A DNA stretch of 64,000 nt from Thecamonas trahens ATCC 50062 (lineage: Eukaryota; Protista; Apusomonadida), in assembly GCF_000142905.1 (NCBI RefSeq), contig NW_013657679.1:436657-500656 (forward strand), given 5' to 3'. Made by a program: the position numbers and the translations under genes. Of this stretch, positions 47,629 through 59,250 are shown in pieces (the first letter of the stretch is position 1; each line of letters starts with the position of its first letter). Below the pieces are notes generated by a model, which made no database searches, was not told where the DNA came from, and saw only the letters and a program-made list of their open reading frames with translations.

Positions 47629-49863
47629 TCAAGCGCCGCGGGAGCGGGCGTGGCGGCGCTTCTTCTCTTTGCTCTTCCGGCGGTCGCGCTTGGCGGAACT
47701 TGCGCCCGACTTGGTCTCCTTGGTGGCTTCGTCCGGGTTCTCGTCCTCGGTCTGTGTGCCTGCGTCGAGGCCGCGTGAGAGGAACTGCTGGGCAAAGTCT
47801 GCTGTGTCCTTGGGCTTGAGGACGCGCGCGACGACTTGGTTGATCTTGGCGTGCTTGTGCGAGACGTAGCGTTGCCAGCGGTGGAGCTCAAGCTCCATGG
47901 TTGGTCGGAGCTTCTCTTGGATCTCGAGCTTGCAGATGGCGAGAACCGACTTGATCTGGAGGACGGTGCGGATGTCGGCATCGACATGGAGCACGATGCG
48001 CGAGAGCGTGTGCAGGACAGGGAGGAAGGTCGGGAGTGGGCCCTCGTCGTACTCTGCGGCAACAAGGCCGGTGACGTGATTAGAGCCTCCCGAGACCGCC
48101 GACGCCGAGGGCATCATCTGGTCCGAGTCGAGCGAAGCCACCGACGACGAGAGCTCCGGTAGCTGCGGGCGCCGAACAGGGCGCCGCTTGAAGCGGAGGC
48201 ACGCGCGCGCCACAAAGGCGTAGCGGCGGGCCAGGAAGACGCGAACTTTGACGCCGCGGTACCACGACTGGATGCGGACGGCGGCGTTGTACATGGTAAG
48301 GTAGGTGAGGAGAATGTCGCGGTGGAAAAAGTGCACAAAGGTCTCAATCTGGGACTCGGGTAGCTTGGAGGCGAGCACGCCCTGGATGGTAGAGAGATTG
48401 GCAAGGTAGAGCGAATGACAAAGTTGTGAGGTCTTCTCCATTCGCTTGTGCAGCTCCTTGTTCTGGTTGAGGAGGGCAAGGACGCGCTTGCCAATGATGA
48501 CGTTCTCCTCCATGAGCGTCTGCTTCTCGGACGACATGGTCGCCAGAATGCCCGACTGCATGGCGAGCGTGGCCTCGGCCTGCGCAAACTGAGAGTTGAC
48601 CGACTTGAGCTCGGCGAGAAGCTTCTCGTTGATGTCCTGGAACTGCTTCTTGGCCAGGCCTTTGAGCGGGTGGGCAAACTCGGCGTCACAGTACTCGCGC
48701 ATTAGGCCGACGTTGGCGGAGAGTCGGCGCTCGTCCTCAAGTCGGGCCACCTGCGCGGTGAGCAAGTCGTTGGTCTCCTTCACCCGGTTGAGTTCCTGCA
48801 GGAGCGCCAGTGCGTTGGCTGGCGAGACCTGCGACGGCGGGCTGCCGCCGATGTTGGCCTCGCGCCAGGCCTTGAGCTCGTCGCCAAAGTCGTTACGGAG
48901 GAGCGGATCCTGCAACCAGGTGTCGAGATCGGCGAGCGTGGTCGGATCTGGCAGCTCGGTCGGTGGGCGGACAAGGAGTGCCAGGCTGGGATTCGCCGCC
49001 AGGTTGTGCTTGGCAACAAGGGCGCGGTGGGCGGCGAGCTCGTTCTGCAGTGCCATGGTGAGGACTCGAAGGAAGGTCTCGTCCGACTCGCCAAAGTATC
49101 TGTTGAGCAGCGGGTCGCAGGCAAAACGCTGCTCGCGCGACCGCAGCTTGGTGTTCTCCTGCTTGAGCCTGTTGTTGTCGCGGATGATGTGCGGGAGGTC
49201 GCCGTACTCCTCCACCACACGAGCCAGGTGCTCGTTGGCCTCGAAGCGGAGGAGCTTCTTCTTGAGCACGACAATGAGCTGCTCAAGCCGCTCAAACTTG
49301 AGCTCCATCAGCATCCACTTGCGCCCGTTGTCGTCGGCCGGCAGCGACGGCGCCATCAGGTTCTGCGGCTCGTCGGTGACGAGCTCGTTGACCCGGATAT
49401 CGTTCTCGATGGCCTCCACGTCGCCTTGCAGCTTGTCGGCCGAGAGCGAGACGGGCACAAACGAAAACTGCTCGTACATCGACGTCACCTTGTGCTGCGC
49501 CTTGAGCTCGGCACGGAGCGTCTTCTCGCGCGCTTCCATCATGGTCAGCCGCGCCTGGAGATCGGCCACCGAGTCGAGGAGCTCGCCGTTGACGTCGCGG
49601 TAGCCGCGGCAGAGGCCCTGCAAGTCCTTGACAAACTTCTGCCGCTCACGCGGCGTCATAAACGCGTTCTGCTCTACCTGCTGTAGCCGCGCCCACTTGC
49701 TCTCCAGCGCAACCATCTTGGCTCCGGGCTCGCCGTCGCCGTCCCCGCTTGCCCCGCCTCGGCCGGCCGCCTCCCGCGAGCTCGGTGCCGGCTGTGTCTT
49801 CAGCGCCTCGGGCTGCGCCAGCCGCAGCTGGTCGGTACCCACCGTCCGAATGTGCCGCGACAT
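47629..49863 (-). CDS. Coiled-coil protein with one IQ motif
   Basis: Extensive heptads; AAVRIQSWYRGVKVR. Confidence 0.75.
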   Translation of the reverse strand: MSRHIRTVGTDQLRLAQPEALKTQPAPSSREAAGRGGASGDGDGEPGAKMVALESKWARLQQVEQNAFMTPRERQKFVKDLQGLCRGYRDVNGELLDSVADLQARLTMMEAREKTLRAELKAQHKVTSMYEQFSFVPVSLSADKLQGDVEAIENDIRVNELVTDEPQNLMAPSLPADDNGRKWMLMELKFERLEQLIVVLKKKLLRFEANEHLARVVEEYGDLPHIIRDNNRLKQENTKLRSREQRFACDPLLNRYFGESDETFLRVLTMALQNELAAHRALVAKHNLAANPSLALLVRPPTELPDPTTLADLDTWLQDPLLRNDFGDELKAWREANIGGSPPSQVSPANALALLQELNRVKETNDLLTAQVARLEDERRLSANVGLMREYCDAEFAHPLKGLAKKQFQDINEKLLAELKSVNSQFAQAEATLAMQSGILATMSSEKQTLMEENVIIGKRVLALLNQNKELHKRMEKTSQLCHSLYLANLSTIQGVLASKLPESQIETFVHFFHRDILLTYLTMYNAAVRIQSWYRGVKVRVFLARRYAFVARACLRFKRRPVRRPQLPELSSSVASLDSDQMMPSASAVSGGSNHVTGLVAAEYDEGPLPTFLPVLHTLSRIVLHVDADIRTVLQIKSVLAICKLEIQEKLRPTMELELHRWQRYVSHKHAKINQVVARVLKPKDTADFAQQFLSRGLDAGTQTEDENPDEATKETKSGASSAKRDRRKSKEKKRRHARSRGA

Positions 49864-50033
49864 GACGTGTCTCTCTGGCCGCAATGAAGGGTGGGAGGTG
49901 TGGAAGGAAGGTGGCGTGGGTGGTGAGAGGTGCCAGCAGTGAGACTGCGCCCGCCCGCAACGGCCGAGAGCCGGTGGCACCCGACGGTACGTCAGTCTCT
50001 GTGGAGCCCATCGAATTTGGGCCCATTTCGTCG

Positions 50034-50166: not shown

Positions 50167-53100
50167 ATGTCAGGTATGTGATGGTGTCAGAAAGGGAGGG
50201 TGAGGGTAGCAGGGGAGGTGGGGAGGGGAGGCAGAGGGGGCTGGCCTCTGGCTGGAGACGACCCAAAATGTGGCTTCTGGGCAAGGCATGCTCACAAAGT
50301 ACGANNNNNNNNNNNNNNNNNNNNNNNNNNNNNNNNNNNNNNNNNNNNNNNNNNNNNNNNNNNNNNNNNNNNNNNNNNNNNNNNNNNNNNNNNNNNNNNN
50401 NNNNCCGACCGGCCCGCTCGGGGGGGGGGGGGCGATGACGGACGGCGGGTGTAGACGGACTGTTTGACGACATCTCGGACGATGGCCTGTTTGGAACGGC
50501 CAACCCGCAGAACCCGTTTCGCACTGCTGGCGGTGACAACCTCTTTGGCGATCCGTTGTTTGACGCTGGCGCACCAGGTGGGGACGCCAATGAGCCTGCG
50601 GGCCTCCGTGGGCTGAGCAACGAAGAGCTGTTCTCGTCGATCACGCCGGGTCGGACCAAGGCCCCGTCGATGGGCGGCCACGATCTTCTGGCCACAGTCT
50701 CGGCCACGGTCGGCGGCAAGTCGCAGCGGTCAAAGCGGCGCCGCAAGCGCAAGACGGACGCTCTGTTTGCGACGGCACCGGTGGCTGCCGCGGAGCCGGC
50801 CGCTGCTCCTGCTCCTGCTCCTGCTCCTGCTTCGACTCCTGCTCCTGAGCCCGAGCCCGAGCCCAAGCCTGAGCCCGAGCCCGAGCCCGAGCCCGAGCCG
50901 GCCGCCAAGACCGACGCCAAGGGCCTCACGCCGGCGCAGGCCCAGGTGAAGGAGCTTGTGAGGCGGCTAGTGACCCGCGGGACGCCAAGTGTTGCGTACG
51001 GCACGCTCAAGTCTGCGGCTGCTGACGAGGGCTTTGACAACGTGTTTGTCATTCTCAAGGCGCTCAAGAAGGCGCGTGTGGTCGACTACGCCGGCGGAAT
51101 GATCACCACCGACACGGCGCGCGTGTACTTTGTGCCGTACGGCGGACGGGTGCCCAAGACAAATGGCTCGGGGTCCGGCGCTTCCGGCGTGCCGAGCCCG
51201 GGTGCTCAGCACACCGGGTCGTATCTGCGGAGCCAGGCCACGAGTCAGCCCAAGGCGACGAGTGGCAGCAATGCAGCGACGCTGTCGGCGTCGACCAAGC
51301 GCGAGCTTGCGGCGCGCGAGGCGCAACAAGAGTCTGAGCGCGACGCGCGGCTGCGGGCAGCCGAGGCCGAGCGGGAGGCGCAGGCGGCCGAGCTGCAGCG
51401 GCGGGCGCAGGCACGGCGCGAGGTTAAGCGTCCGACGATGTTTTCGCGTGCGGCAGCGTGATGAGCGGGCGCGCTGCGAATGCGAGGCCGAGGCGGTCGA
51501 ACTTTTGGCGCGGGTTCTATTGGTTTTTCGTCTTTTATTTTCCAAGTTAGCTTAGTCCGAGGCGACCAAGGCGCGTGAGGCCGAAGCCGCGGCGGCGGCT
51601 GCCAAAGCGGCCAAGGCCAAGGCTGCGGCTGCCGCCGCCGCTGAAGAGGCTCGCGCTGCGGCGGTGGCCAAGGCCAAGGCCGATGCCAAGGCCCGCGAGG
51701 AGGCCGAGCGCAAGGTCGAGGCCGAGGCGCTCCGGGCCAAGCTCGCTTCGCCGGAGACGTCCGAGTACTCGGAGCGGTCGCGGACGCGGACGCGGACTCT
51801 ATCAACGACATCGCGGGGCGCCGCTGGACTCCCGACGTCTGCGCCTCAAGTCTCGTCGCCGCTGGTGTCGCCGGCACCGGCAAAGGCGTCGGAAGCGGCA
51901 GCGGCGGCCGAGGAGAAGCGGCTGCTGCAGGAGATGGCGCGGCAGCAGCAGGCCGAAGAGCAGGAGCTGCGGGTGGCACGCGAGGCGCGCCGGCTGCGCG
52001 AGGCTCAGGAGCGTGTGGAGATCGAAAAGGCGGCCGAGGCACGGCGCGCTGCCGAGGTGGCGGCGGCGCTGGCAGCAGCCAAGTCGAGCGGTGTGTCTGC
52101 TTCAAGCAGCTCGGGCGCAAGCACCGAGGCTGTGGCGGCGGCGTCGGCGTCCGAGGCCTCGGGTTGGGTCGAGCTCCAGACCGAGGACGGCTTTGTGTAC
52201 TACTACAACGAGGCGCTCGATCTGACGCAGCACACCAAGCCGGACGCACTCAAGACTGCAGCCGACTTTGCCCACACCGGCGAGTGGGTGTGGGTGGCTG
52301 TGGAGAAGGACGGATACGTTCCCGGCAAGGTGGTGACGCGGTCCTCGGCCGGCGTGGTGACGCATGTCGAGACCGAGGATGGGCACACGGTCAAGATTTC
52401 ACCCAAGGATCGGCAGCCGCTGTACCCGCTCAACAAGGCAGACCTCAACAAGGACTCGGACGACCTTGTGCAGATGAACGCCATCGACGAGGGTATCATT
52501 CTCCATGCGCTCTCGCGGCGGTTTGCGCGCGACGTCATCTACACCAACATCGGGAGCATTCTCATTGCGGTCAACCCATACAAGTGGGTCAAGCCGTCGC
52601 CGTACGGAGACGACGTCATGGCCAAGTACGCGGCCAAGGGCACCGGCCTTGCCCCGCCGCACATCTTTGACATTGCGGACGCGGCGTACCGCGAGATGTC
52701 GGACGCGCTGTCGACCGGCGTGCCGCCAAACCAGTCGATTCTCATTTCGGGCGAGTCGGGTGCCGGCAAGACCGAGGCGACCAAGCAGGCGCTCAAGTAC
52801 CTCGCGTTTGTGGCCGGCTCCGAGTCTGGGGTGGAGGCCAAGTTGCTGGTGGCCAACCCTGTGCTAGAGGCGTTTGGCAATGCTGCGACGCTACGGAACC
52901 ATAACTCGTCGCGGTTTGGCAAGTGGATGGAGGTGTTCTTCTCACCGTCGCGCGCCATTTCGGGCGCGCGGTTCAACAACTACCTGCTCGAAAAGTCGCG
53001 GGTGGTTCACCAGGACGCCGGCGAGCGCAACTACCACATCTTCTACCAGCTTGCCCGCGATCCGGTCTGGGGACCGCGGTTTGGCCTGGAGAGCCCGAGT

Positions 53101-56100
53101 CAGTACGTGTACACGCAGACGCACACCGACATCGAGTTTGGCTCGTGGTCGGACGCGAGCCAGTTTGCCGAGCTCCTCGAGGCGATGGAGACGCTCGGCT
53201 TTGCCACGGCGACGGTGGAGGGCATTCTGCAGACGGTGGCGGCGTGCCTCCACCTCGGCAACCTCACGTTTGCCGAGGGCGAGAGCGAGGACTCGTCACG
53301 GGTCACCTCCAAGCCGGTCCTCAAGCAGTGCGCGTCGTTGCTCGGGCTGTCGGGCGGGGCGCTCGAGGCAGCGCTGGTGAACAAGACCATGATCCTTCCC
53401 AACCAGTCGCAGGTGGTCATTCCGCTCTCGCCGTCTGCAGCGGCCGACAACCGCGACGCGCTGGTCAAGTCGCTCTACGCCTCGCTCTTTGACTTTCTGG
53501 TGGTGCAGATCAACGCGGCGATCGAGGTGCCCGGGGCCGCGGCGGCGTCGTGCGCCACCATCGGAGTTCTCGACATCTTTGGCTTTGAGATTTTCGAGAC
53601 CAACTCGTTTGAGCAGCTCTGCATCAACTTTGCAAACGAGAAGCTCCAGCAGCACTTTAACGCGCACACGTTCAAGCTCGAGCAAGAGCTGTACGAGTCC
53701 GAAGGCATCGCCTTTGACGAGGTCAAGTACATCGACAACCAGCCGGTGCTCGACCTGCTCGAGGCGCGGCGCGGCGGGGTGTTTGCCATTTTGGACGAGG
53801 AGCTGCTGCTCACGTCTGCGACGGACAAGCGGCTTGTGGAGAAGCTCCACGCGGCACACTCGGACTCGCCGCACTACGTCGTCTCGTACCTTGCGCCGTA
53901 CGCGTTTGGCATCAAGCACTACGCCGGCGAGGTCACGTACGACGTCACCGGCTTCCTTGAGAAGAACAAGGACACGCTCGAGCAGGACCTTCTGACGCTC
54001 GTCTCGGGCTCGGACAACACCTTCCTCCGCGGCCTCTTTGACGTCGAGGCCTCCAAGCACCGCAAAAAGTCTGTCGGCTACCAGTTCCGGTCGCAGCTTG
54101 GTGAGCTGATGGAGGAGCTCAACGCGACGACGCCGCACTATGTGCGGTGCATCAAGCCCAACTCGGTCAAGCGCCCGGGCAAGTGGGAGGGCCACGACGT
54201 GCTGCTTCAGCTCCGCTACGCCGGTGTGTTTGAGGCTGTTGCCATCCGGCAGTCGGGCTACCCGTTCCGCTGGACGCACGCGCAGTTTATTCAGCGCTAC
54301 GGGGTGTTCAACATGTGGCAAAAGGGCGCGTCGGCCAAGGCGACGTGCAAGGCGATCATGGCAGCGGTGGGCGTCGACCCCAAGCACATCCAGCTCGGGC
54401 GGACACGCGTGCTGTACCGCGCGCAGGCGCACCGGGTCCTGGAGATCGCGCGCTCGGTCATCCTGCAAAAGATGGCAATGCGGATCCAGCGGTGCTACCG
54501 CGGGCATCGGGCGCGCAAGATTGCGCGCGAGATGAGCAAGCTCCGCGACGTACTTGCCCGCGCCATTGCAGAGCGGTCGTTTGAGGCGCTCTCACAGGCG
54601 CTGGCCCAGGCCGACGCCTCGCCGTTCCAGCTGTACATTGCGACCGAGGCCCGTGGGGTGTTGGCCGAGTTGGCGGCCGAGGAGGAGGTCAAGGCGAGCA
54701 TGGCGAGCTTTGTGGGCAAAGACCCGGACGTGCACTACGAGGCCATTGTGGGTGTGCTCAACAAGGCTACCGAGCTCGGCCTGGCTGTTCCGGTCATGGC
54801 CACGCTCCGCGAGTCGATTGCGTCGATTGCCGAGCGCAAGGAGGCGGCGATCAACCTCCGCGACGGCACGACCGAGTACGACCGGGTCAAGCTCGAGGCC
54901 GGCATCGAGGCGGCACTCCGGCTCCAACTACCGCTCAAGGCCGAGATTGCGCAGGCGCGTGCGGTGCTCCGCGACGTCGGAACGGAAGAGGTGCTGGTGA
55001 GCCAGCTGGGGCCGGCGCTGCTTTCGGCGACGGAGGACCTGCTTCCTCTGGAGGACGCGCTCTCGCGCGCGGTCGACTTTGGGCTCAAGACGCCGCAAGG
55101 CATGCAGCTCCGGGCGCAGCTCGAGGCGGCGCTCCTCATCCGGCGCGCGATCCGCGACCAGGCATGGGAGTCGCTCAACGAGGCGCTCAACCGGGCCGAG
55201 AGCTCAGGCCTGACCAACGCCGACGTGTCGGGAGCACGTGCGGGACTCGCCAAGCGGGCGCGGATGGGCGCGGTGGCGGCACGGCTCAAGCACGCATGCC
55301 GCGCCAAGTGCGTTGAACGGATGGAGGCTGCGCTCGACGAGGCCAACGCGCTCGACATGCGCAACTCGGTGTGGTCGTCGTGGTCGCGTGAAGTTGAGGC
55401 CGCATCTGCGCGCCTCGAGGCGCACAAGCGCATGCTCAAGGCTCTGCGAATCACGCTCACGCCCGGACACGAGGACGACATTGCCGAACTTGGCCGAGTT
55501 GTGCGCGAGGCGGAGGAGTACGAGTTTGTGGAGGCCAAGGAAAAGGCACTACTCGCCGAGGCGCGGGTGGTGCTTTCCATCCGGTCTGCCCTGGCAACGG
55601 ACGACTTTGAGTCACTCGCAGAGGCTGTGGCGGACGGGCTTGACGCGCACAACACGTCGCATGAGGTGCAGCTTGCGGCGGAGGGTCTCGCGCTTCGCGA
55701 GAGGATGGCGGATGTTGCGCGCAGCCTGGAGGCTGCGGCCGACAAGGCGTGTGCCGACTCGATGGCGAGCGCGGTTGAAGAGGCGGTCCGGCTGGATATG
55801 AAGAGCTCGCGATGGTCGACGTGGGGCGGGCTGTTGGCGAGTGTGGAAGACAAGCTCGCGGAGCACGAGTCGCTGGTGCGTGCGCTGACGGCGGCGATGG
55901 CGCCAGGCACGTCGGCGTCGATTGCACCGCTGTCCGAGGCCATTGGCTCGTCACTGGCGTACGGGTTCAAGGTGGAGAAGGATGTGCGGCTGCTCCGGTC
56001 TGCGCAGGTCATCCTCACCATCCGGCAGGCGCTTGCGGGGACCGACTTCGCGACGCTGGCGAGCGCGGTGGAGAAGGCGCGGGCGCTGTTCTTCTCGCAT

Positions 56101-59100
56101 TCGGAGGTGGAGGCTGTGGCGGAGGGCCTTGCGCTGCGGGAGCGGATGAGCGGCGTTGCGGCGCGGCTGGAAGAGGGCATGCGGAGCCACTCTGCCGAGC
56201 TGATGGCGTCGTCCGAGGCTGCTGCAGTGGCGCTGGACATGGATACTTCGTATTGGTCGACGTGGGGCGAGGTGCTCAAGGCCGGGCGTGCGCAGCTTGC
56301 GAAGCACAACTCGCTGGTGGAGGCGCTCAAGGGCGCGCTCGCGCCAGGGACGGAGAAGCTGACGGGCCCGCTTGCCGAGGCGCTCGACGCAGCCGACGAG
56401 TACGGCTTTGTGACCGAGGCCGATGTGGCGCTGGCGACCAAGGCGCGGCTGACGCTGGCCATGCGCCGGGCGGTTGCAGCGCGGCTGTGGGAGCCACTGC
56501 GGGAGGCTGTGAGCAAGGCGGCGTCGTCGGGCTTCCAGTCGGGCGAGATTGCGACGTACGGGTCCGGCCTTGCGGAGCGGACCAAAATGTCAGCGGTAGC
56601 CGACGAGCTAGAGGCTGCGTCGGCGGCGCACGACGCGTCGCGGCTGGCACGCGCGCTCAAGAAGGCGCGGTCGCTGGAGATGGACACCTCGTTCTGGTCG
56701 TCGTGGGCTGACGAGGTCGAGGCTGCGGCCAGCCTCCTCGACAAGCACCGCAAGCTTGTGACCAAGCTCAAGTCCGTGATTGCGGTGGGGACTCGCGAGC
56801 TCATTGACCCGCTCGCAAACGCTATTGCTGAAGCCGAGGCCTTTGGCTTCAAGGTCGAGGGCGACCTCGCGCTGGTGCGCAAGGCGCAGGTTACGCTCGA
56901 CCTCCGGCGGGCGCTCTCGGTCAAGTCGTGGGAGGGCATCAAGGCGGCGGTGGAGGCCGCGGCACACCTTGGGTACCTCTCGTCCGAGGTGGATGCTGCG
57001 TCGCAGGGTCTCGCGCTGCGGAAAAAGATGGCGGAGACTGCAAAGGAGCTGAAGGAGGCGATGGCTGCGCACGACGCGGCGCTGCTCGACGAGGTCCTTT
57101 CCAAGGCGATGGAGCTCGACATGGGCGGCGAGTCGTTCTGGTCGTCGTGGGCCGAGGTTGTAATCGCTGGTGAGGCGCAGCTTCGGGAGCATACCAAGCT
57201 CAAGAACACGCTCAAGGCGTGCATGGGCCCGCGGACCCAGCTCCTCATCGAGCCGCTGGCCGAGGCGCTCAACGCGGTCATCGAGTTTGGGTTCTCAGTG
57301 GATGCCGACCTCGGGCTGCAGCGGCGGGCGCAGCTGACGCTCGATGCGCGCCGGGCCATGGCGGACCGCAACTTTGTGGCGCTGACCGGCGTGGTTGACC
57401 GCGCGTCTGCGTTTGGCGTTGTCTCACCCGAGCTTCAGGACTACGCGGCGGGCCTGCAGACGCGGAGCGCGATGGAGGGCGTGGCCAAGGCGGTGGCGCG
57501 GGCGGCCGATGCGCACGATGCGCGGGCGCTAGAGGCTGCGCTTGCGCATGCAGACGAGCTCGAGATGGAGACCTCGGTGTGGTCGACGTGGGAGGGTGAG
57601 CTGGGTGAGGCGCGCAAGCAGCTCGCCCACCACACCGGAATCATCTCGCGGATCTCGTCGTCGCTGCTCCCGGGCGCCGAAGACGACATCGAGGGCCTTT
57701 CGGGTGCGCTGGAGGCTGCGGCCGAGTTTGAAATGATGGTCGAGTCTGACGTGGAGCTTGTGGATCGGGCGACTGTTGTGCTTGCGCTCCGCAAGGCACT
57801 CGCGCACTACGATGTGTCTGCGGTGGAGCAGGCGATGGCGCGTGCGCGGTTCGTGGGCATCGACGAGGCCGAGTCCAACGAGCTGGCGAGTGCGATCAAG
57901 GCCGTGGCGCTTGTGGCGCAGCTGGAGGGCATGGCTGCGCAGATGCGCAAGTCGCTGGCGGTGCACGACGGGCCGGCGCTGGCGAGCCAGCTCGCAGAGG
58001 CGCGGCAGGCCGGGATGGACTCGTCGGGCTGGTCGCAGTGGGGCGAGCTTGTGGTCTCTGCCCAGGAAGTGGTGCGGCAGCACCGGCAGGTGACGATGGC
58101 GCTCCACGCGACGCTGGCGGCGGGTACGTCGCTTCAGATCGAGCCGCTTGCGCAGGCGCTGGAGAACGCACAAGCCTTTGGCCTGCACACAGCCGAGGAC
58201 GTGGCGCTGATGCAGGGCGCCGAGGTGACGCTTGCGCTCCGGCGCGGGCTGGCAAGCAACGACTGGACAGCGATCCGCGGAGCGCTCGACCAGGCGACGG
58301 TTGTCGGCTTTGAGTCGGAGGAGACGACCGAAGCTGCAAGTGGGATGGAGGAGCGAAGCCAGCTTAGTAAGGTGGCGGACGCGCTCAACGACGCGATCAA
58401 CCGCCGCGACGGAGCCAAGCTTCGGCGGCTGGTGGGTGAGGCCGAGGCGCTGGACATGGCGCGGTCGCGGTGGTCGACCTGGTCGGAGCTGTACACGTCT
58501 GCGCTCACGACGCTCACGACGTACGAGAGTCTGCGGTCGACGCTCGAGGCCGCGCTGGTGCCTTCGCAGGTCCCGCTGGGCAAGCTCGACGCGACGCTCG
58601 AGGCAGCGGCGGCTTTCCACTTTTACTCAGTCGACGACCTCGCGCTGGTCAAGGCTGCGCAGGTGCTGGCGGACTTGCGTCGGGCGATGCTCGAGGAGAA
58701 CTTTGAGGCGCTGGCGCGGGTGCTGGGCGCAGCATCAGAGGCCTCGCTTGACACGGATGAGATCGATGAGGCTGGTCTCACGCTCGACCTGTACCGCAAG
58801 CAGAGCGCAAGCGCCGACGACCTGGCTGCAGCGGTGGAGGACGTGTTCCTCCTCGAGCCGACGGCGGTCGATGAGCTGCAGCAGGCAGTTGACGCCGGTG
58901 CAGCGCTCAACATGGCGACCTCGCGTGTGGCGTCGTTTGCAGCCAAGTTTGGCGAGGCGCGGGCGCTGCTCGACAAGCTGCGCAACATCGAGACGCTCGT
59001 CGAGCAGGGCGTGGCCATGTGCGACGAGTCGCTCCTGCGGCGCGGAGTGGCCGAGGCCGACGCGCTCGGATGGGTCGCCGAGTCGGTCGAGGTCGCGCGG

Positions 59101-59250
59101 CTGCTCGTTGACGACGTGGTTGCGGTGGCCGAAGAGACCGAAGACGCGCTGCGCGACGGCTCGCGCGGCGCGCTCCTCCGGGCCAAGGACAAGGCCGACG
59201 TCATCGGGTTCGCGAGGTGCGCCGATGCGCTCGAGGCAGCGCTGTCGTGA
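50167..59250 (+). CDS. Giant unconventional myosin (~2889 aa): LF-acidic region, Costars-like, coiled coil, WW, SH3-like, motor, IQ, tandem-repeat tail. Proposed join 50167..50173, 50455..51422, 51556..59250
   Basis: Motor with GESGAGKT, NSSRFGK, LDIFGFE, YVRCIKPN (high confidence). Introns GTATGT...GTAG (phase 1) and GTTAAG...TTAG (phase 0) join the ORFs in frame (moderate confidence). Confidence 0.85.
55000..58950 (+). repeat. Eight full and one degenerate ~441-nt (147-aa) coding repeats in the myosin tail
   Basis: M..S.WS.W motif recurs near 55372, 55812, 56254, 56695, 57139, 57580, 58030 and 58471; degenerate copy near 58920. Confidence 0.9.

What the first reader, a model, noticed from the sequence alone, without database searches (positions are those of the whole stretch)
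50167..59250. Giant myosin with an apparently undescribed Costars-WW-motor-repeat architecture
Seen: ORF 50556..51461 and the myosin ORF join in frame through intron 51423..51555 (the myosin frame has no ATG near its start). Segment ~50925-51135 (VAYGTL...FDNVFVILKALKKARVVDYAGGM) resembles the Costars/ABRACL actin-associated winged helix. A WW domain follows (GWVELQTEDGFVYYYNEALDLTQHTKP, second Trp replaced by His), then SH3-like, an intact motor and one clear IQ. I know of no myosin class with this combination. Inference: a motor with a second actin-binding site and endosomal adaptor motifs.
Basis: partly seen in the sequence, partly recalled or inferred. Interest (0 to 1): 0.85.

Follow-up and report, generated by a model that had tools for sequence, protein, structure and literature searches.

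The report
Divergent class IV myosin, extended N-terminus
This is one long, already publicly annotated gene of the gliding protist Thecamonas trahens: a class IV myosin motor whose usual helical tail module is multiplied about tenfold and whose front end carries a small winged-helix domain that may or may not be Costars-related. It is an interesting variant, not a new class of motor.

Summary
The ORF with the winged-helix segment and the myosin ORF join in frame through a GT..AG intron at 51423-51555. The same junction is used in the public model Ttra_AMSG_00218, about 2,890 aa. The assembly gap lies in intron 1 in both 5' models and touches at most the first 2-10 codons. No cDNA spans either junction.

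The architecture is not outside the known classes. The motor sits with full support inside class IV. The N-terminal WW plus SH3-like pair is a class IV hallmark. The 147-aa tail repeat is a module that ordinary class IV tails carry twice, here amplified to about ten copies. MyTH4 and SH3 are absent. Three T. trahens paralogues share this tail.

Only the ~570-aa N-terminal extension is unique to this gene. It holds an LF/NPF acidic motif cluster, a basic patch, a PA/PE linker, a ~70-aa winged-helix domain and E/R/K-rich helices. The Costars match is the only Pfam hit but is below threshold (21.2 vs 24 bits). No relatives were found among 1.84 billion proteins. Fold searches return only generic winged helices. 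A second actin-binding site is not supported.

The scan had already read the tail module the same way on the paralogues.

The parts
50167..50173 (+).
   Evidence: Joins in frame to 50455. An RNA-library contig matches the genome down to the AG at 50453-54 and then has 3 unaligned letters. That fits an upstream exon ending in ..AG. Not proven.
50268..50298 (+). Alternative first exon, as in the public model AMSG_00218: ATG + 28 nt, with a GTACGA donor at 50299
   Evidence: The N-terminus of the public protein in DataS1 of PMC3942036 maps here. Codon log-odds are -0.16, which is uninformative for so short a stretch.
50305..50404 (.). Assembly gap, inside intron 1 in both 5' models
   Evidence: An in-frame TGA at 50436-38 separates the gap from exon 2. 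No run covered the gap.
50455..51422 (+). Exon 2: the N-terminal extension
   Evidence: Open frame with a coding codon bias in this frame only. RNA-library contigs match at 50453-50672 and 50697-50790.
50457..50633 (+). Acidic LF / NPF short-motif cluster: five LF, one NPF, 11 D+E against 2 K+R
   Evidence: 5 LF observed against 0.17 expected; 1 of 20,000 shuffles reaches this.
50718..50753 (+). Basic patch (K/R-rich, NLS-like)
   Evidence: Read directly from the translation.
50778..50900 (+). Low-complexity PA/PE linker
   Evidence: The spurious Pfam PARP/TonB hits fall here.
50931..51137 (+). Winged-helix domain; sub-threshold Costars match at 50964-51107
51297..51422 (+). First half of an E/R/K/A-rich helix-like segment
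   Evidence: Composition; codon log-odds +1.19.
51423..51555 (+). Intron 2: GT..AG, 133 nt
   Evidence: The public model has the same junction. There is no Rfam match and no stable fold. No RNA contig lies inside it, and one begins at 51556/7.
51556..59250 (+). Exon 3: the rest of the extension, WW, motor, IQ, tail and stop codon
   Evidence: A 2,564-codon open frame.
51556..52083 (+). Second half of the charged helix (to 51744), an S/T/P linker, and a second charged helix (51892-52083). An in-frame ATG lies at 51934.
   Evidence: RNA-library contigs match at 51557-51797 and 51745-51899.
52162..52242 (+). Degenerate class IV WW domain; the second Trp is His, at 52231-33
52282..52407 (+). Myosin N-terminal SH3-like domain
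   Evidence: Pfam PF02736 at 18.6 bits. It aligns with the class IV relatives.
52459..54420 (+). Myosin motor domain, catalytic motifs intact
   Evidence: PF00063 at 702.7 bits. P-loop, switch I and switch II are present and the TEDS residue is Ser.
54484..54516 (+). Single IQ motif
   Evidence: Exact match to the IQxxxRGxxxR pattern. Pfam IQ gives 13.1 bits.
54721..59142 (+). Tail: about ten tandem 147-aa all-helical modules. Eight carry the W-S/T-x-W signature, with a degenerate copy at each end.
   Evidence: Spacing between copies is 147-150 aa. The two-module AF2 model has pLDDT 95.9 and six helices per module. There is no DNA-level tandem repeat. The module profile hits ordinary class IV tails.

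Best explanation
The locus is a single gene of Thecamonas trahens, the public model AMSG_00218. It has three exons and encodes about 2,890 aa. The product is a lineage-specific derivative of a class IV myosin.

Shown:
- The motor is complete and belongs phylogenetically to class IV.
- It is preceded by the class IV WW + SH3-like pair, with the second (ligand-binding) Trp of the WW lost.
- It is followed by one IQ.
- The tail consists of about ten copies of a 147-aa, six-helix module. Ordinary class IV myosins carry this module twice, between the IQ and MyTH4. This gene has no MyTH4 or SH3.
- A ~570-aa N-terminal extension is coded in the same frame on both sides of intron 2.

Inferred:
- The protein is an actin-based motor.
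- The amplified helical tail acts as a long rod or scaffold in place of the usual MyTH4-SH3 cargo end.
- The mostly disordered N-terminal arm presents short acidic LF/NPF motifs and one small winged-helix domain as docking sites for partners.
- The two E/R/K-rich helices act as spacers.

Whether the winged helix is a true, very divergent Costars domain is open, at about even odds. What it binds is unknown.
For: Genome identity: P0002 and P0001 of T. trahens map at 100% to other contigs of this genome.

Public model: the AMSG_00218 sequence in DataS1 of PMC3942036 has the same exon 2 | exon 3 junction and the same C-terminus.

Gene structure:
- Splice signals, in-frame junction and the GC drop in the intron.
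- Codon log-odds are positive only in the proposed frame for 50457-51422 and 51556-52161, and negative in the intron.
- There is no in-frame ATG between 51556 and 51934.
- RNA-library contigs match both exons and none lies in the intron.

Class IV membership:
- the best hits are WW-head-MyTH4(-SH3) proteins.
- ML trees: a 27-row clade with Acanthamoeba, Balamuthia and Stygamoeba class IV has support 100/100. This gene + P0002 has 99/96; adding P0001 gives 100/100; that group is sister to the canonical T. trahens class IV P0007 at 98/96. The 17 other full-length T. trahens myosin heads in the tree fall outside.
- The WW profile scores 40 bits, E 1e-14 (alignment).

Tail:
- The module profile hits 78 of 123 fetched proteins, including Acanthamoeba P0036 at 853-1007 and 1010-1132. 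Myosin V controls give no hit.
- AF2 of two modules gives pLDDT 95.9.
- 43% identity to P0002 over 1,809 aa.

No MyTH4.

Winged helix.
Against: - No read or cDNA spans either intron. The one reads call returned only short contigs.
- Run X9 is of unknown kind. It covers 51914-53496 at 99% identity or more and nothing upstream. If it is RNA, this hints at an internal start 20 nt before ATG 51934.
- The three paralogues begin 30 aa or less before their WW.
- The first exon is ambiguous and intron 1 holds an unread gap.
- No orthologue above about 56% identity was found, so the extension has no comparative support.
- By published architecture (WW + head + MyTH4) the MyTH4 criterion fails. Which class Sebe-Pedros et al. 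assigned to this gene could not be read, because the figures are not held. They also list an unnamed 'Thecamonas orphan' group.
- My tree has non-Thecamonas outgroups only for class V.
Confidence: 0.75

Rival explanations
1. Two transcription units, or a dominant short isoform. An upstream gene for an LF-motif / winged-helix / charged-helix protein would end at the TGA at 51462. The myosin would be translated from ATG 51934, 76 codons before the WW.
For: - ATG 51934 exists.
- The paralogues start close to their WW.
- X9 contigs begin at 51914, with nothing upstream.
- No junction-spanning RNA was seen.
Against: - 51556-51933 has clear coding codon bias in the myosin frame (+1.32 and +0.54) but no ATG to enter it.
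- The intron has canonical ends, a T-rich tract and no coding signal.
- RNA-library contigs cover 51557-51899 at depths like those downstream.
- The public model joins the exons.
- X9 holds only about 30% of the genome in contigs and its kind is unknown.
Confidence: 0.12
2. One reading: the winged helix is a functional Costars domain that gives the motor a second actin-binding site, and the LF/NPF motifs tie it to endosomal adaptors.
For: - Costars is the only Pfam family that matches, at E 3.3e-4. It covers profile positions 15-64 of 76.
- It is the only PF14705 match in the whole genome, at genome-wide E 0.013.
- The predicted order H-S-H-H-S-S equals the order described for Ms1 ABD2 and COSTARS.
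- The LF adjacency is non-random and one NPF is present.
Against: - The match is below Pfam's cut-off of 24 bits.
- phmmer over 1.84 billion proteins found no Costars protein, only three spurious repeat proteins.
- There was no match to solved Costars chains by sequence, nor in the top 50 rows of three fold searches.
- In the Ms1/COSTARS family as described in PMC4682817 the folded domain is the whole 81-residue protein or the C-terminus. Here it is internal.
- PMC4682817 states that COSTARS bound neither actin nor DNA in vitro.
- No partner was tested.
Confidence: 0.2
3. The winged helix is an orphan, generic winged-helix domain unrelated to Costars. It would be a protein-protein or nucleic-acid-binding module, and the Pfam hit would reflect fold-level convergence.
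For: - The nearest named ESM clusters are DsrD and MCM winged helices, at 0.81-0.84.
- No sequence relatives were found anywhere.
- A basic patch lies upstream.
Against: Among the many winged-helix families in Pfam, only Costars passes HMMER's filters, with a calibrated E of 3.3e-4.
Confidence: 0.4

Closest known systems
Class IV myosin (Acanthamoeba HMWMI type; defined in Sebe-Pedros et al. 2014, PMC3942036)
   Same: - The motor is nested in the clade, at 100/100 support.
- It has the N-terminal WW followed by an SH3-like domain.
- It has one IQ.
- It has the 147-aa helical module directly after the IQ.
   Different: - It has no MyTH4 and no C-terminal SH3 or WW.
- The helical module is present about ten times instead of twice.
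- The WW has lost its second Trp.
- It has a ~570-aa N-terminal extension. Some other class IV members carry a GYF domain there instead.
T. trahens paralogues AMSG_02747 (P0002) and 'myosin XI-2' (P0001, plus its tandem twin)
   Same: - The sub-clade is the same, at 100/100 support.
- The WW is degenerate in the same way, with the second Trp replaced.
- The tails are built from the same amplified 147-aa module.
- Identity to P0002 is 43% over 1,809 aa.
   Different: - The paralogues start 30 aa or less before the WW and lack the extension and the winged helix.
- P0001 keeps a MyTH4, and P0002 ends in a canonical WW.
Costars / ABRACL / C-terminal ABD2 of STARS-Ms1 (PF14705; PDB 2L2O, 2KRH)
   Same: - The domain size is about 75 aa.
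- The winged-helix order H1-S1-H2-H3-S2-S3 is the same.
- It is the only Pfam family matched, at 21.2 bits.
- A basic stretch lies upstream, as in Ms1.
   Different: - The match is below the family cut-off.
- It has no pairwise relatives.
- It is not among the best structural matches.
- It sits inside a giant motor protein rather than standing alone or at the C-terminus.
LF-acidic (FAM21-type) and NPF (EH-domain-binding) short linear motifs
   Same: LF pairs separated by acidic residues, plus one NPF, in a strongly acidic stretch that is probably disordered. The comparison with the FAM21 and EH-domain motifs rests on my own knowledge, not on a test here.
   Different: - The host protein is a myosin.
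- The spacers are not purely D/E.
- No partner is known.
- Translation of this stretch depends on an unverified first exon.

Membership tests
Class IV myosin | Motor domain groups with class IV motors in a phylogeny | tested here: met
   IQ-TREE LG+G4, 46 motors, 678 columns. The clade holding Acanthamoeba, Balamuthia and Stygamoeba class IV has 100/100 support, and the 17 other full-length T. trahens myosin heads in the tree fall outside it. Caveat: the only non-Thecamonas outgroup is myosin V.
Class IV myosin | WW domain N- or C-terminal to the head | tested here: met
   A profile of 80 class IV N-terminal WW regions gives 40.0 bits, E 1e-14 (alignment). The Pfam WW model alone gives 18.7 bits against a cut-off of 26.9, and the second Trp is His.
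Class IV myosin | MyTH4 domain in the tail | tested here: not met
   There is no PF00784 match in the protein or near the gene in six frames. The C-terminus aligns to the last degenerate module that precedes MyTH4 in P0001.
Class IV myosin | C-terminal SH3 (present in some members, including canonical T. trahens P0007) | tested here: not met
   No SH3 family matches the tail. P0007 has one.
Class IV myosin | Helical 147-aa module after the IQ (not a published criterion; found here and by an earlier scan report) | tested here: met
   The module HMM hits 78 of 123 fetched proteins, typically as two copies at about residues 860-1135. Myosin V controls give no hit.
Costars (PF14705) | Score at or above Pfam's gathering threshold | tested here: not met
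   21.2 bits for the domain alone, 17.9 within the ORF and 20.5 in the six-frame genome search, against a cut-off of 24.
Costars (PF14705) | Winged-helix fold with the order H1-S1-H2-H3-S2-S3 | tested here: inconclusive
   The single-sequence AF2 model gives that order but at pLDDT 67.5. The order is the one described in PMC4682817. The fold is shared by hundreds of unrelated families.
Costars (PF14705) | Closest structural neighbours are the solved Costars domains (2L2O, 2KRH) | tested here: not met
   Neither appears in the top rows of Foldseek pdb, VIA wide or the VIA second look. The model is of only moderate confidence, so this is weak evidence.
Costars (PF14705) | Detectable sequence relatives among Costars proteins | tested here: not met
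   phmmer against 1.84 billion representatives gave three spurious repeat proteins only. PDB sequences gave nothing. The short-protein search gave nothing.
Costars (PF14705) | Profile-profile similarity to the family alignment | not testable with these tools
Costars (PF14705) | Actin binding or regulation | not testable with these tools
   This needs a co-sedimentation or pull-down experiment. The literature itself is divided.
WW domain (PF00397) | Two signature tryptophans and a score above the cut-off | tested here: not met
   The first Trp is present and the second is His at 52231-33. The score is 18.7 bits against 26.9. Homology to true class IV WW domains is nevertheless clear.

The most novel reading that the evidence does not exclude
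The winged helix is a genuine, highly diverged Costars domain captured by a class IV myosin. Together with the LF-acidic/NPF cluster it would make the N-terminal arm a built-in actin-regulator and endosomal-adaptor docking platform. That would be the first motor-Costars fusion, with cargo or regulator binding at the head end and a rigid helical-repeat rod at the tail end.
Probability: 0.15. Interest if true: 0.6.

Novelty: new variant of a known kind. Interest (0 to 1): 0.35.

Why it matters
Apusomonads are the sister group of animals and fungi, and they glide and feed with actin-based pseudopodia. Their myosin set therefore informs how the motor toolkit evolved.

This gene and its three paralogues show a class IV myosin being rebuilt by amplifying one uncatalogued helical tail module. 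In two of the four genes (this one and P0002) the MyTH4 cargo domain has been dropped. In this gene alone, a long motif-bearing arm has been added in front of the motor.

The practical gains are these:
- A corrected reading of a public 'uncharacterised' protein.
- Coordinates for a well-folding module (pLDDT 96) that deserves a family entry.
- A concrete, cheap test for whether a Costars-type domain can sit on a motor.

It does not open a new class of motors.

Tried and rejected
Searches that gave nothing usable:
- phmmer of the winged helix against 1.84 billion proteins gave only repeat-protein artefacts.
- The word-indexed search of the winged helix gave nothing.
- The metagenome locus scan for the winged helix gave nothing.
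- The scan with the WW-to-motor start found 80 loci, all at 55% identity or less, so no orthologue.
- The word-indexed search with the tail returned nothing, not even the known paralogues, so it is uninformative.
- The ESM Atlas gave only weak generic winged-helix and PLU-1 leads.
- Pfam on 16 two-module tail segments found no family.
- The PDB sequence profile of the tail found one designed protein at E 0.019, which I ignore.
- An internal threefold repeat of the module was not significant (hhalign probability 14-51%).

Other checks:
- I looked for a snoRNA or other RNA in intron 2. There is none.
- I tried to derive T. trahens splice consensus from split myosin-head matches. Those gaps are loop insertions, not introns.
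- The genome search with P0002 failed twice and was replaced by local tblastn.
- The look-up of encoding contigs for P0002 had nothing on record.
- The 'divergent Costars-like microprotein' noted elsewhere in this genome (s1-754793, s1-748061) could not be located. PF14705 finds only the present locus.

Procedure:
- The spliced protein was never sent to a search or fold tool. The exons were searched apart by reference, and the joined step was left out. The exons were set side by side only inside one local script, for composition and coordinates.
- No complex-prediction job was sent, because I do not claim a binding pair.
Full report
WHAT GENOME AND GENE THIS IS. Two Thecamonas trahens proteins found with the motor map at 100% identity to other contigs of the window's own genome. 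They are P0002, 'AMSG_02747', and P0001, 'myosin XI-2'. The window is therefore T. trahens ATCC 50062 or the same assembly. The gene is already public. The sequence set of Sebe-Pedros et al. 2014 (PMC3942036, DataS1) holds Ttra_AMSG_00218. Its text runs from a short N-terminal exon through the LF-rich region, the winged-helix segment and the charged helix into the myosin, and ends at the same C-terminus.

THE ASSEMBLY GAP. The gap at 50305-50404 was checked first, as asked. The frame of exon 2 is closed by a TGA at 50436-38, 32 nt after the gap, so coding cannot run straight out of the gap. Exon 2 must be entered by splicing at the AG at 50453-54. Two upstream exons join in frame:
- the public one, ATG 50268-50298 with donor GTACGA;

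In both models the gap is intronic. It affects only intron length and at most the first 2-10 codons. One RNA-library contig (X4, 223 nt) matches 50453-50672 without a difference and then has three letters that do not match. I could not see the three letters, so this is a hint only. A hidden exon inside the gap cannot be excluded.

IS IT ONE GENE? No read spans intron 2, so the case rests on sequence logic.
- The intron has GT..AG ends and a T-rich tract. Its GC is 0.55 against 0.70-0.74 beside it.
- Exon 2 ends on a full codon, and exon 3 starts right after an in-frame TAG.
- A codon-usage log-odds score trained on the motor and tail is positive only in the proposed frame. Values are LF cluster +0.59, winged helix +1.05, 51297-51422 +1.19, 51556-51744 +1.32, 51745-51933 +0.54 and 51934-52161 +0.96. 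It is negative in all frames in the intron, in 50174-50267 and after the stop.
- The 126 codons from 51556 to 51933 look translated, yet hold no ATG. The first is at 51934. They can only be reached from an upstream exon.
- Seawater metatranscriptome contigs that are identical or nearly so lie at 50453-50672, 50697-50790, 51557-51797 (beginning within one base of the predicted exon start), 51745-51899 and 52010-52186. None lies in the intron.

Two things count against. Run X9, of unknown kind, covers only 51914-53496. The paralogues start within 30 residues of their WW. I put the two-gene or short-isoform rival at about 0.12.

THE MOTOR AND ITS CLASS. Pfam gives Myosin_head at 702.7 bits. The P-loop, switch I and switch II are intact, the TEDS residue is Ser, and there is one exact IQ. 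The best database relatives are almost all WW-head-MyTH4(-SH3) proteins. That is the class IV architecture as defined in PMC3942036. Within T. trahens the motor is 59% identical to P0002, 57% to P0001 and its tandem twin, 51% to the canonical class IV P0007, and 42.5% or less to every other myosin head.

I built ML trees of 46 motors: 22 full-length T. trahens heads, 22 relatives from the search and two vertebrate myosin V. They give:
- a clade with Acanthamoeba, Balamuthia and Stygamoeba class IV at 100/100;
- this gene + P0002 at 99/96;
- with P0001 added, 100/100;
- that group sister to P0007 plus a metagenome relative at 98/96.

The N-terminal WW followed by the SH3-like 'GEWVW' strand is conserved across about 80 of these proteins. 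The three repeat-tail paralogues share the loss of the second Trp, replaced by His, Thr and Glu. A profile built without them scores this gene's WW region at 40 bits, E 1e-14. So WW-SH3-motor-IQ is the class IV signature, not a new combination.

THE TAIL. Eight copies with a W-S/T-x-W signature lie 147-150 residues apart, with a degenerate copy at each end. There is no DNA-level tandem repeat, so the array is old. A profile of the unit hits 78 of 123 fetched proteins. In ordinary class IV myosins, including Acanthamoeba P0036, it hits as two copies right after the IQ and before MyTH4. Myosin V controls with long coiled coils do not hit.

MyTH4 is absent from this gene and from P0002, but present after the repeats in P0001 and its twin. 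The last 230 residues here align to the degenerate module that precedes MyTH4 in P0001. An earlier follow-up in this scan on the paralogues (s1-744733) reached the same reading of the module. My tests were independent of it.

THE N-TERMINAL EXTENSION. This is the only part unique to this gene. Neither the own-genome search nor Pfam finds a second copy of the winged helix, and P0002 has nothing similar. In order, it holds:
- an acidic cluster with five LF and one NPF in 60 residues (0.17 LF expected; 1 of 20,000 shuffles reaches five);
- a K/R patch;
- a PA/PE linker;
- the winged helix;
- an S/G-rich linker;
- an E/R/K/A-rich helix-like segment split by intron 2;
- an S/T/P linker;
- a second charged segment.

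COSTARS OR NOT. In favour:
- PF14705 is the only Pfam family that the 90-residue segment matches. The score is 21.2 bits, E 3.3e-4, over profile positions 15-64 of 76.
- It is the only PF14705 match in the six-frame genome, at genome-wide E 0.013.
- A single-sequence AF2 model (pLDDT 67.5) gives H-S-H-H-S-S(-S). This is the order described for Ms1 ABD2 and COSTARS.

Against:
- All scores are below the cut-off of 24 bits.
- phmmer over 1.84 billion proteins returns only three repeat artefacts.
- There is no sequence match to solved chains.
- The nearest named ESM clusters are other winged helices.

I rate true Costars homology at about even odds. A functional second actin-binding site is much less likely. 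PMC4682817 reports that the 81-residue COSTARS protein (PDB 2L2O) bound neither actin nor DNA.

HOW IT PROBABLY WORKS. Shown: a complete class IV motor with one light-chain site, a degenerate WW, a long array of well-folding helical modules, and no MyTH4 or SH3. Inferred: the motor walks on actin, and the tail forms an extended rod or scaffold rather than a compact cargo end. The flexible N-terminal arm offers linear motifs and one small folded domain for partners, with the charged helices as spacers. Partners, oligomeric state and cellular role are untested.

VERDICT. The architecture is a lineage-specific variant of class IV, already present in public gene sets though not described. The Costars call is a lead, not a finding.

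Noticed in passing
L019 / L020 (G000:C49:270455-275425 and 278046-283016): Two tandem repeat-tail myosin genes have identical motor rows in the tree, but different N-termini and tails (67% positional identity over the two 5-kb loci). An earlier scan report (s1-744717) reads this as gene conversion of the motor halves.
   Followed up: partly
L016 (G000:C37, minus strand), N-terminus of P0007: The genomic frame of the canonical class IV gene starts with a Met directly followed by a complete WW with both Trp. The public protein P0007 has a different, WW-less start. The public 5' model may be wrong.
   Followed up: no
window 51914-53496: Run X9 (labelled with an organism, kind unknown, contigs totalling about 30% of the genome) covers the gene only from 51914 onward. 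That is 20 nt before the in-frame ATG 51934. This could be a read-depth accident or an internal transcript start.
   Followed up: partly
P0002 residues 2048-2078 (G000:C10): The paralogue AMSG_02747 ends in a canonical WW (57 bits), while its N-terminal WW is degenerate. The ligand-binding WW seems to have moved to the tail end in that gene.
   Followed up: no
P0007 residues 787-959; window 56044-56484: There are weak hints that the tail module resembles the PLU-1 helical domain. Pfam gives 27.4 bits against a cut-off of 28.5 on P0007. An ESM Atlas cluster scores 0.88. Only 1 of 16 segments matches, at E 0.17.
   Followed up: partly
window 47632-49980 (-): The divergently transcribed neighbour encodes a ~780-aa protein that looks coiled-coil-rich, with an IQ-like motif and no Pfam family. 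It shares a promoter region of about 200-300 bp with the myosin.
   Followed up: partly
window 54735-57371 (-): An 878-codon open frame lies antisense to the myosin tail. It is Ser/Ala-rich and is typical of chance ORFs opposite GC3-rich genes. I do not take it for a gene.
   Followed up: no
window 53407-53409 (residue 582 of the frame from 51664): The TEDS-rule position of the motor is a serine, so heavy-chain phosphorylation could regulate this myosin.
   Followed up: no
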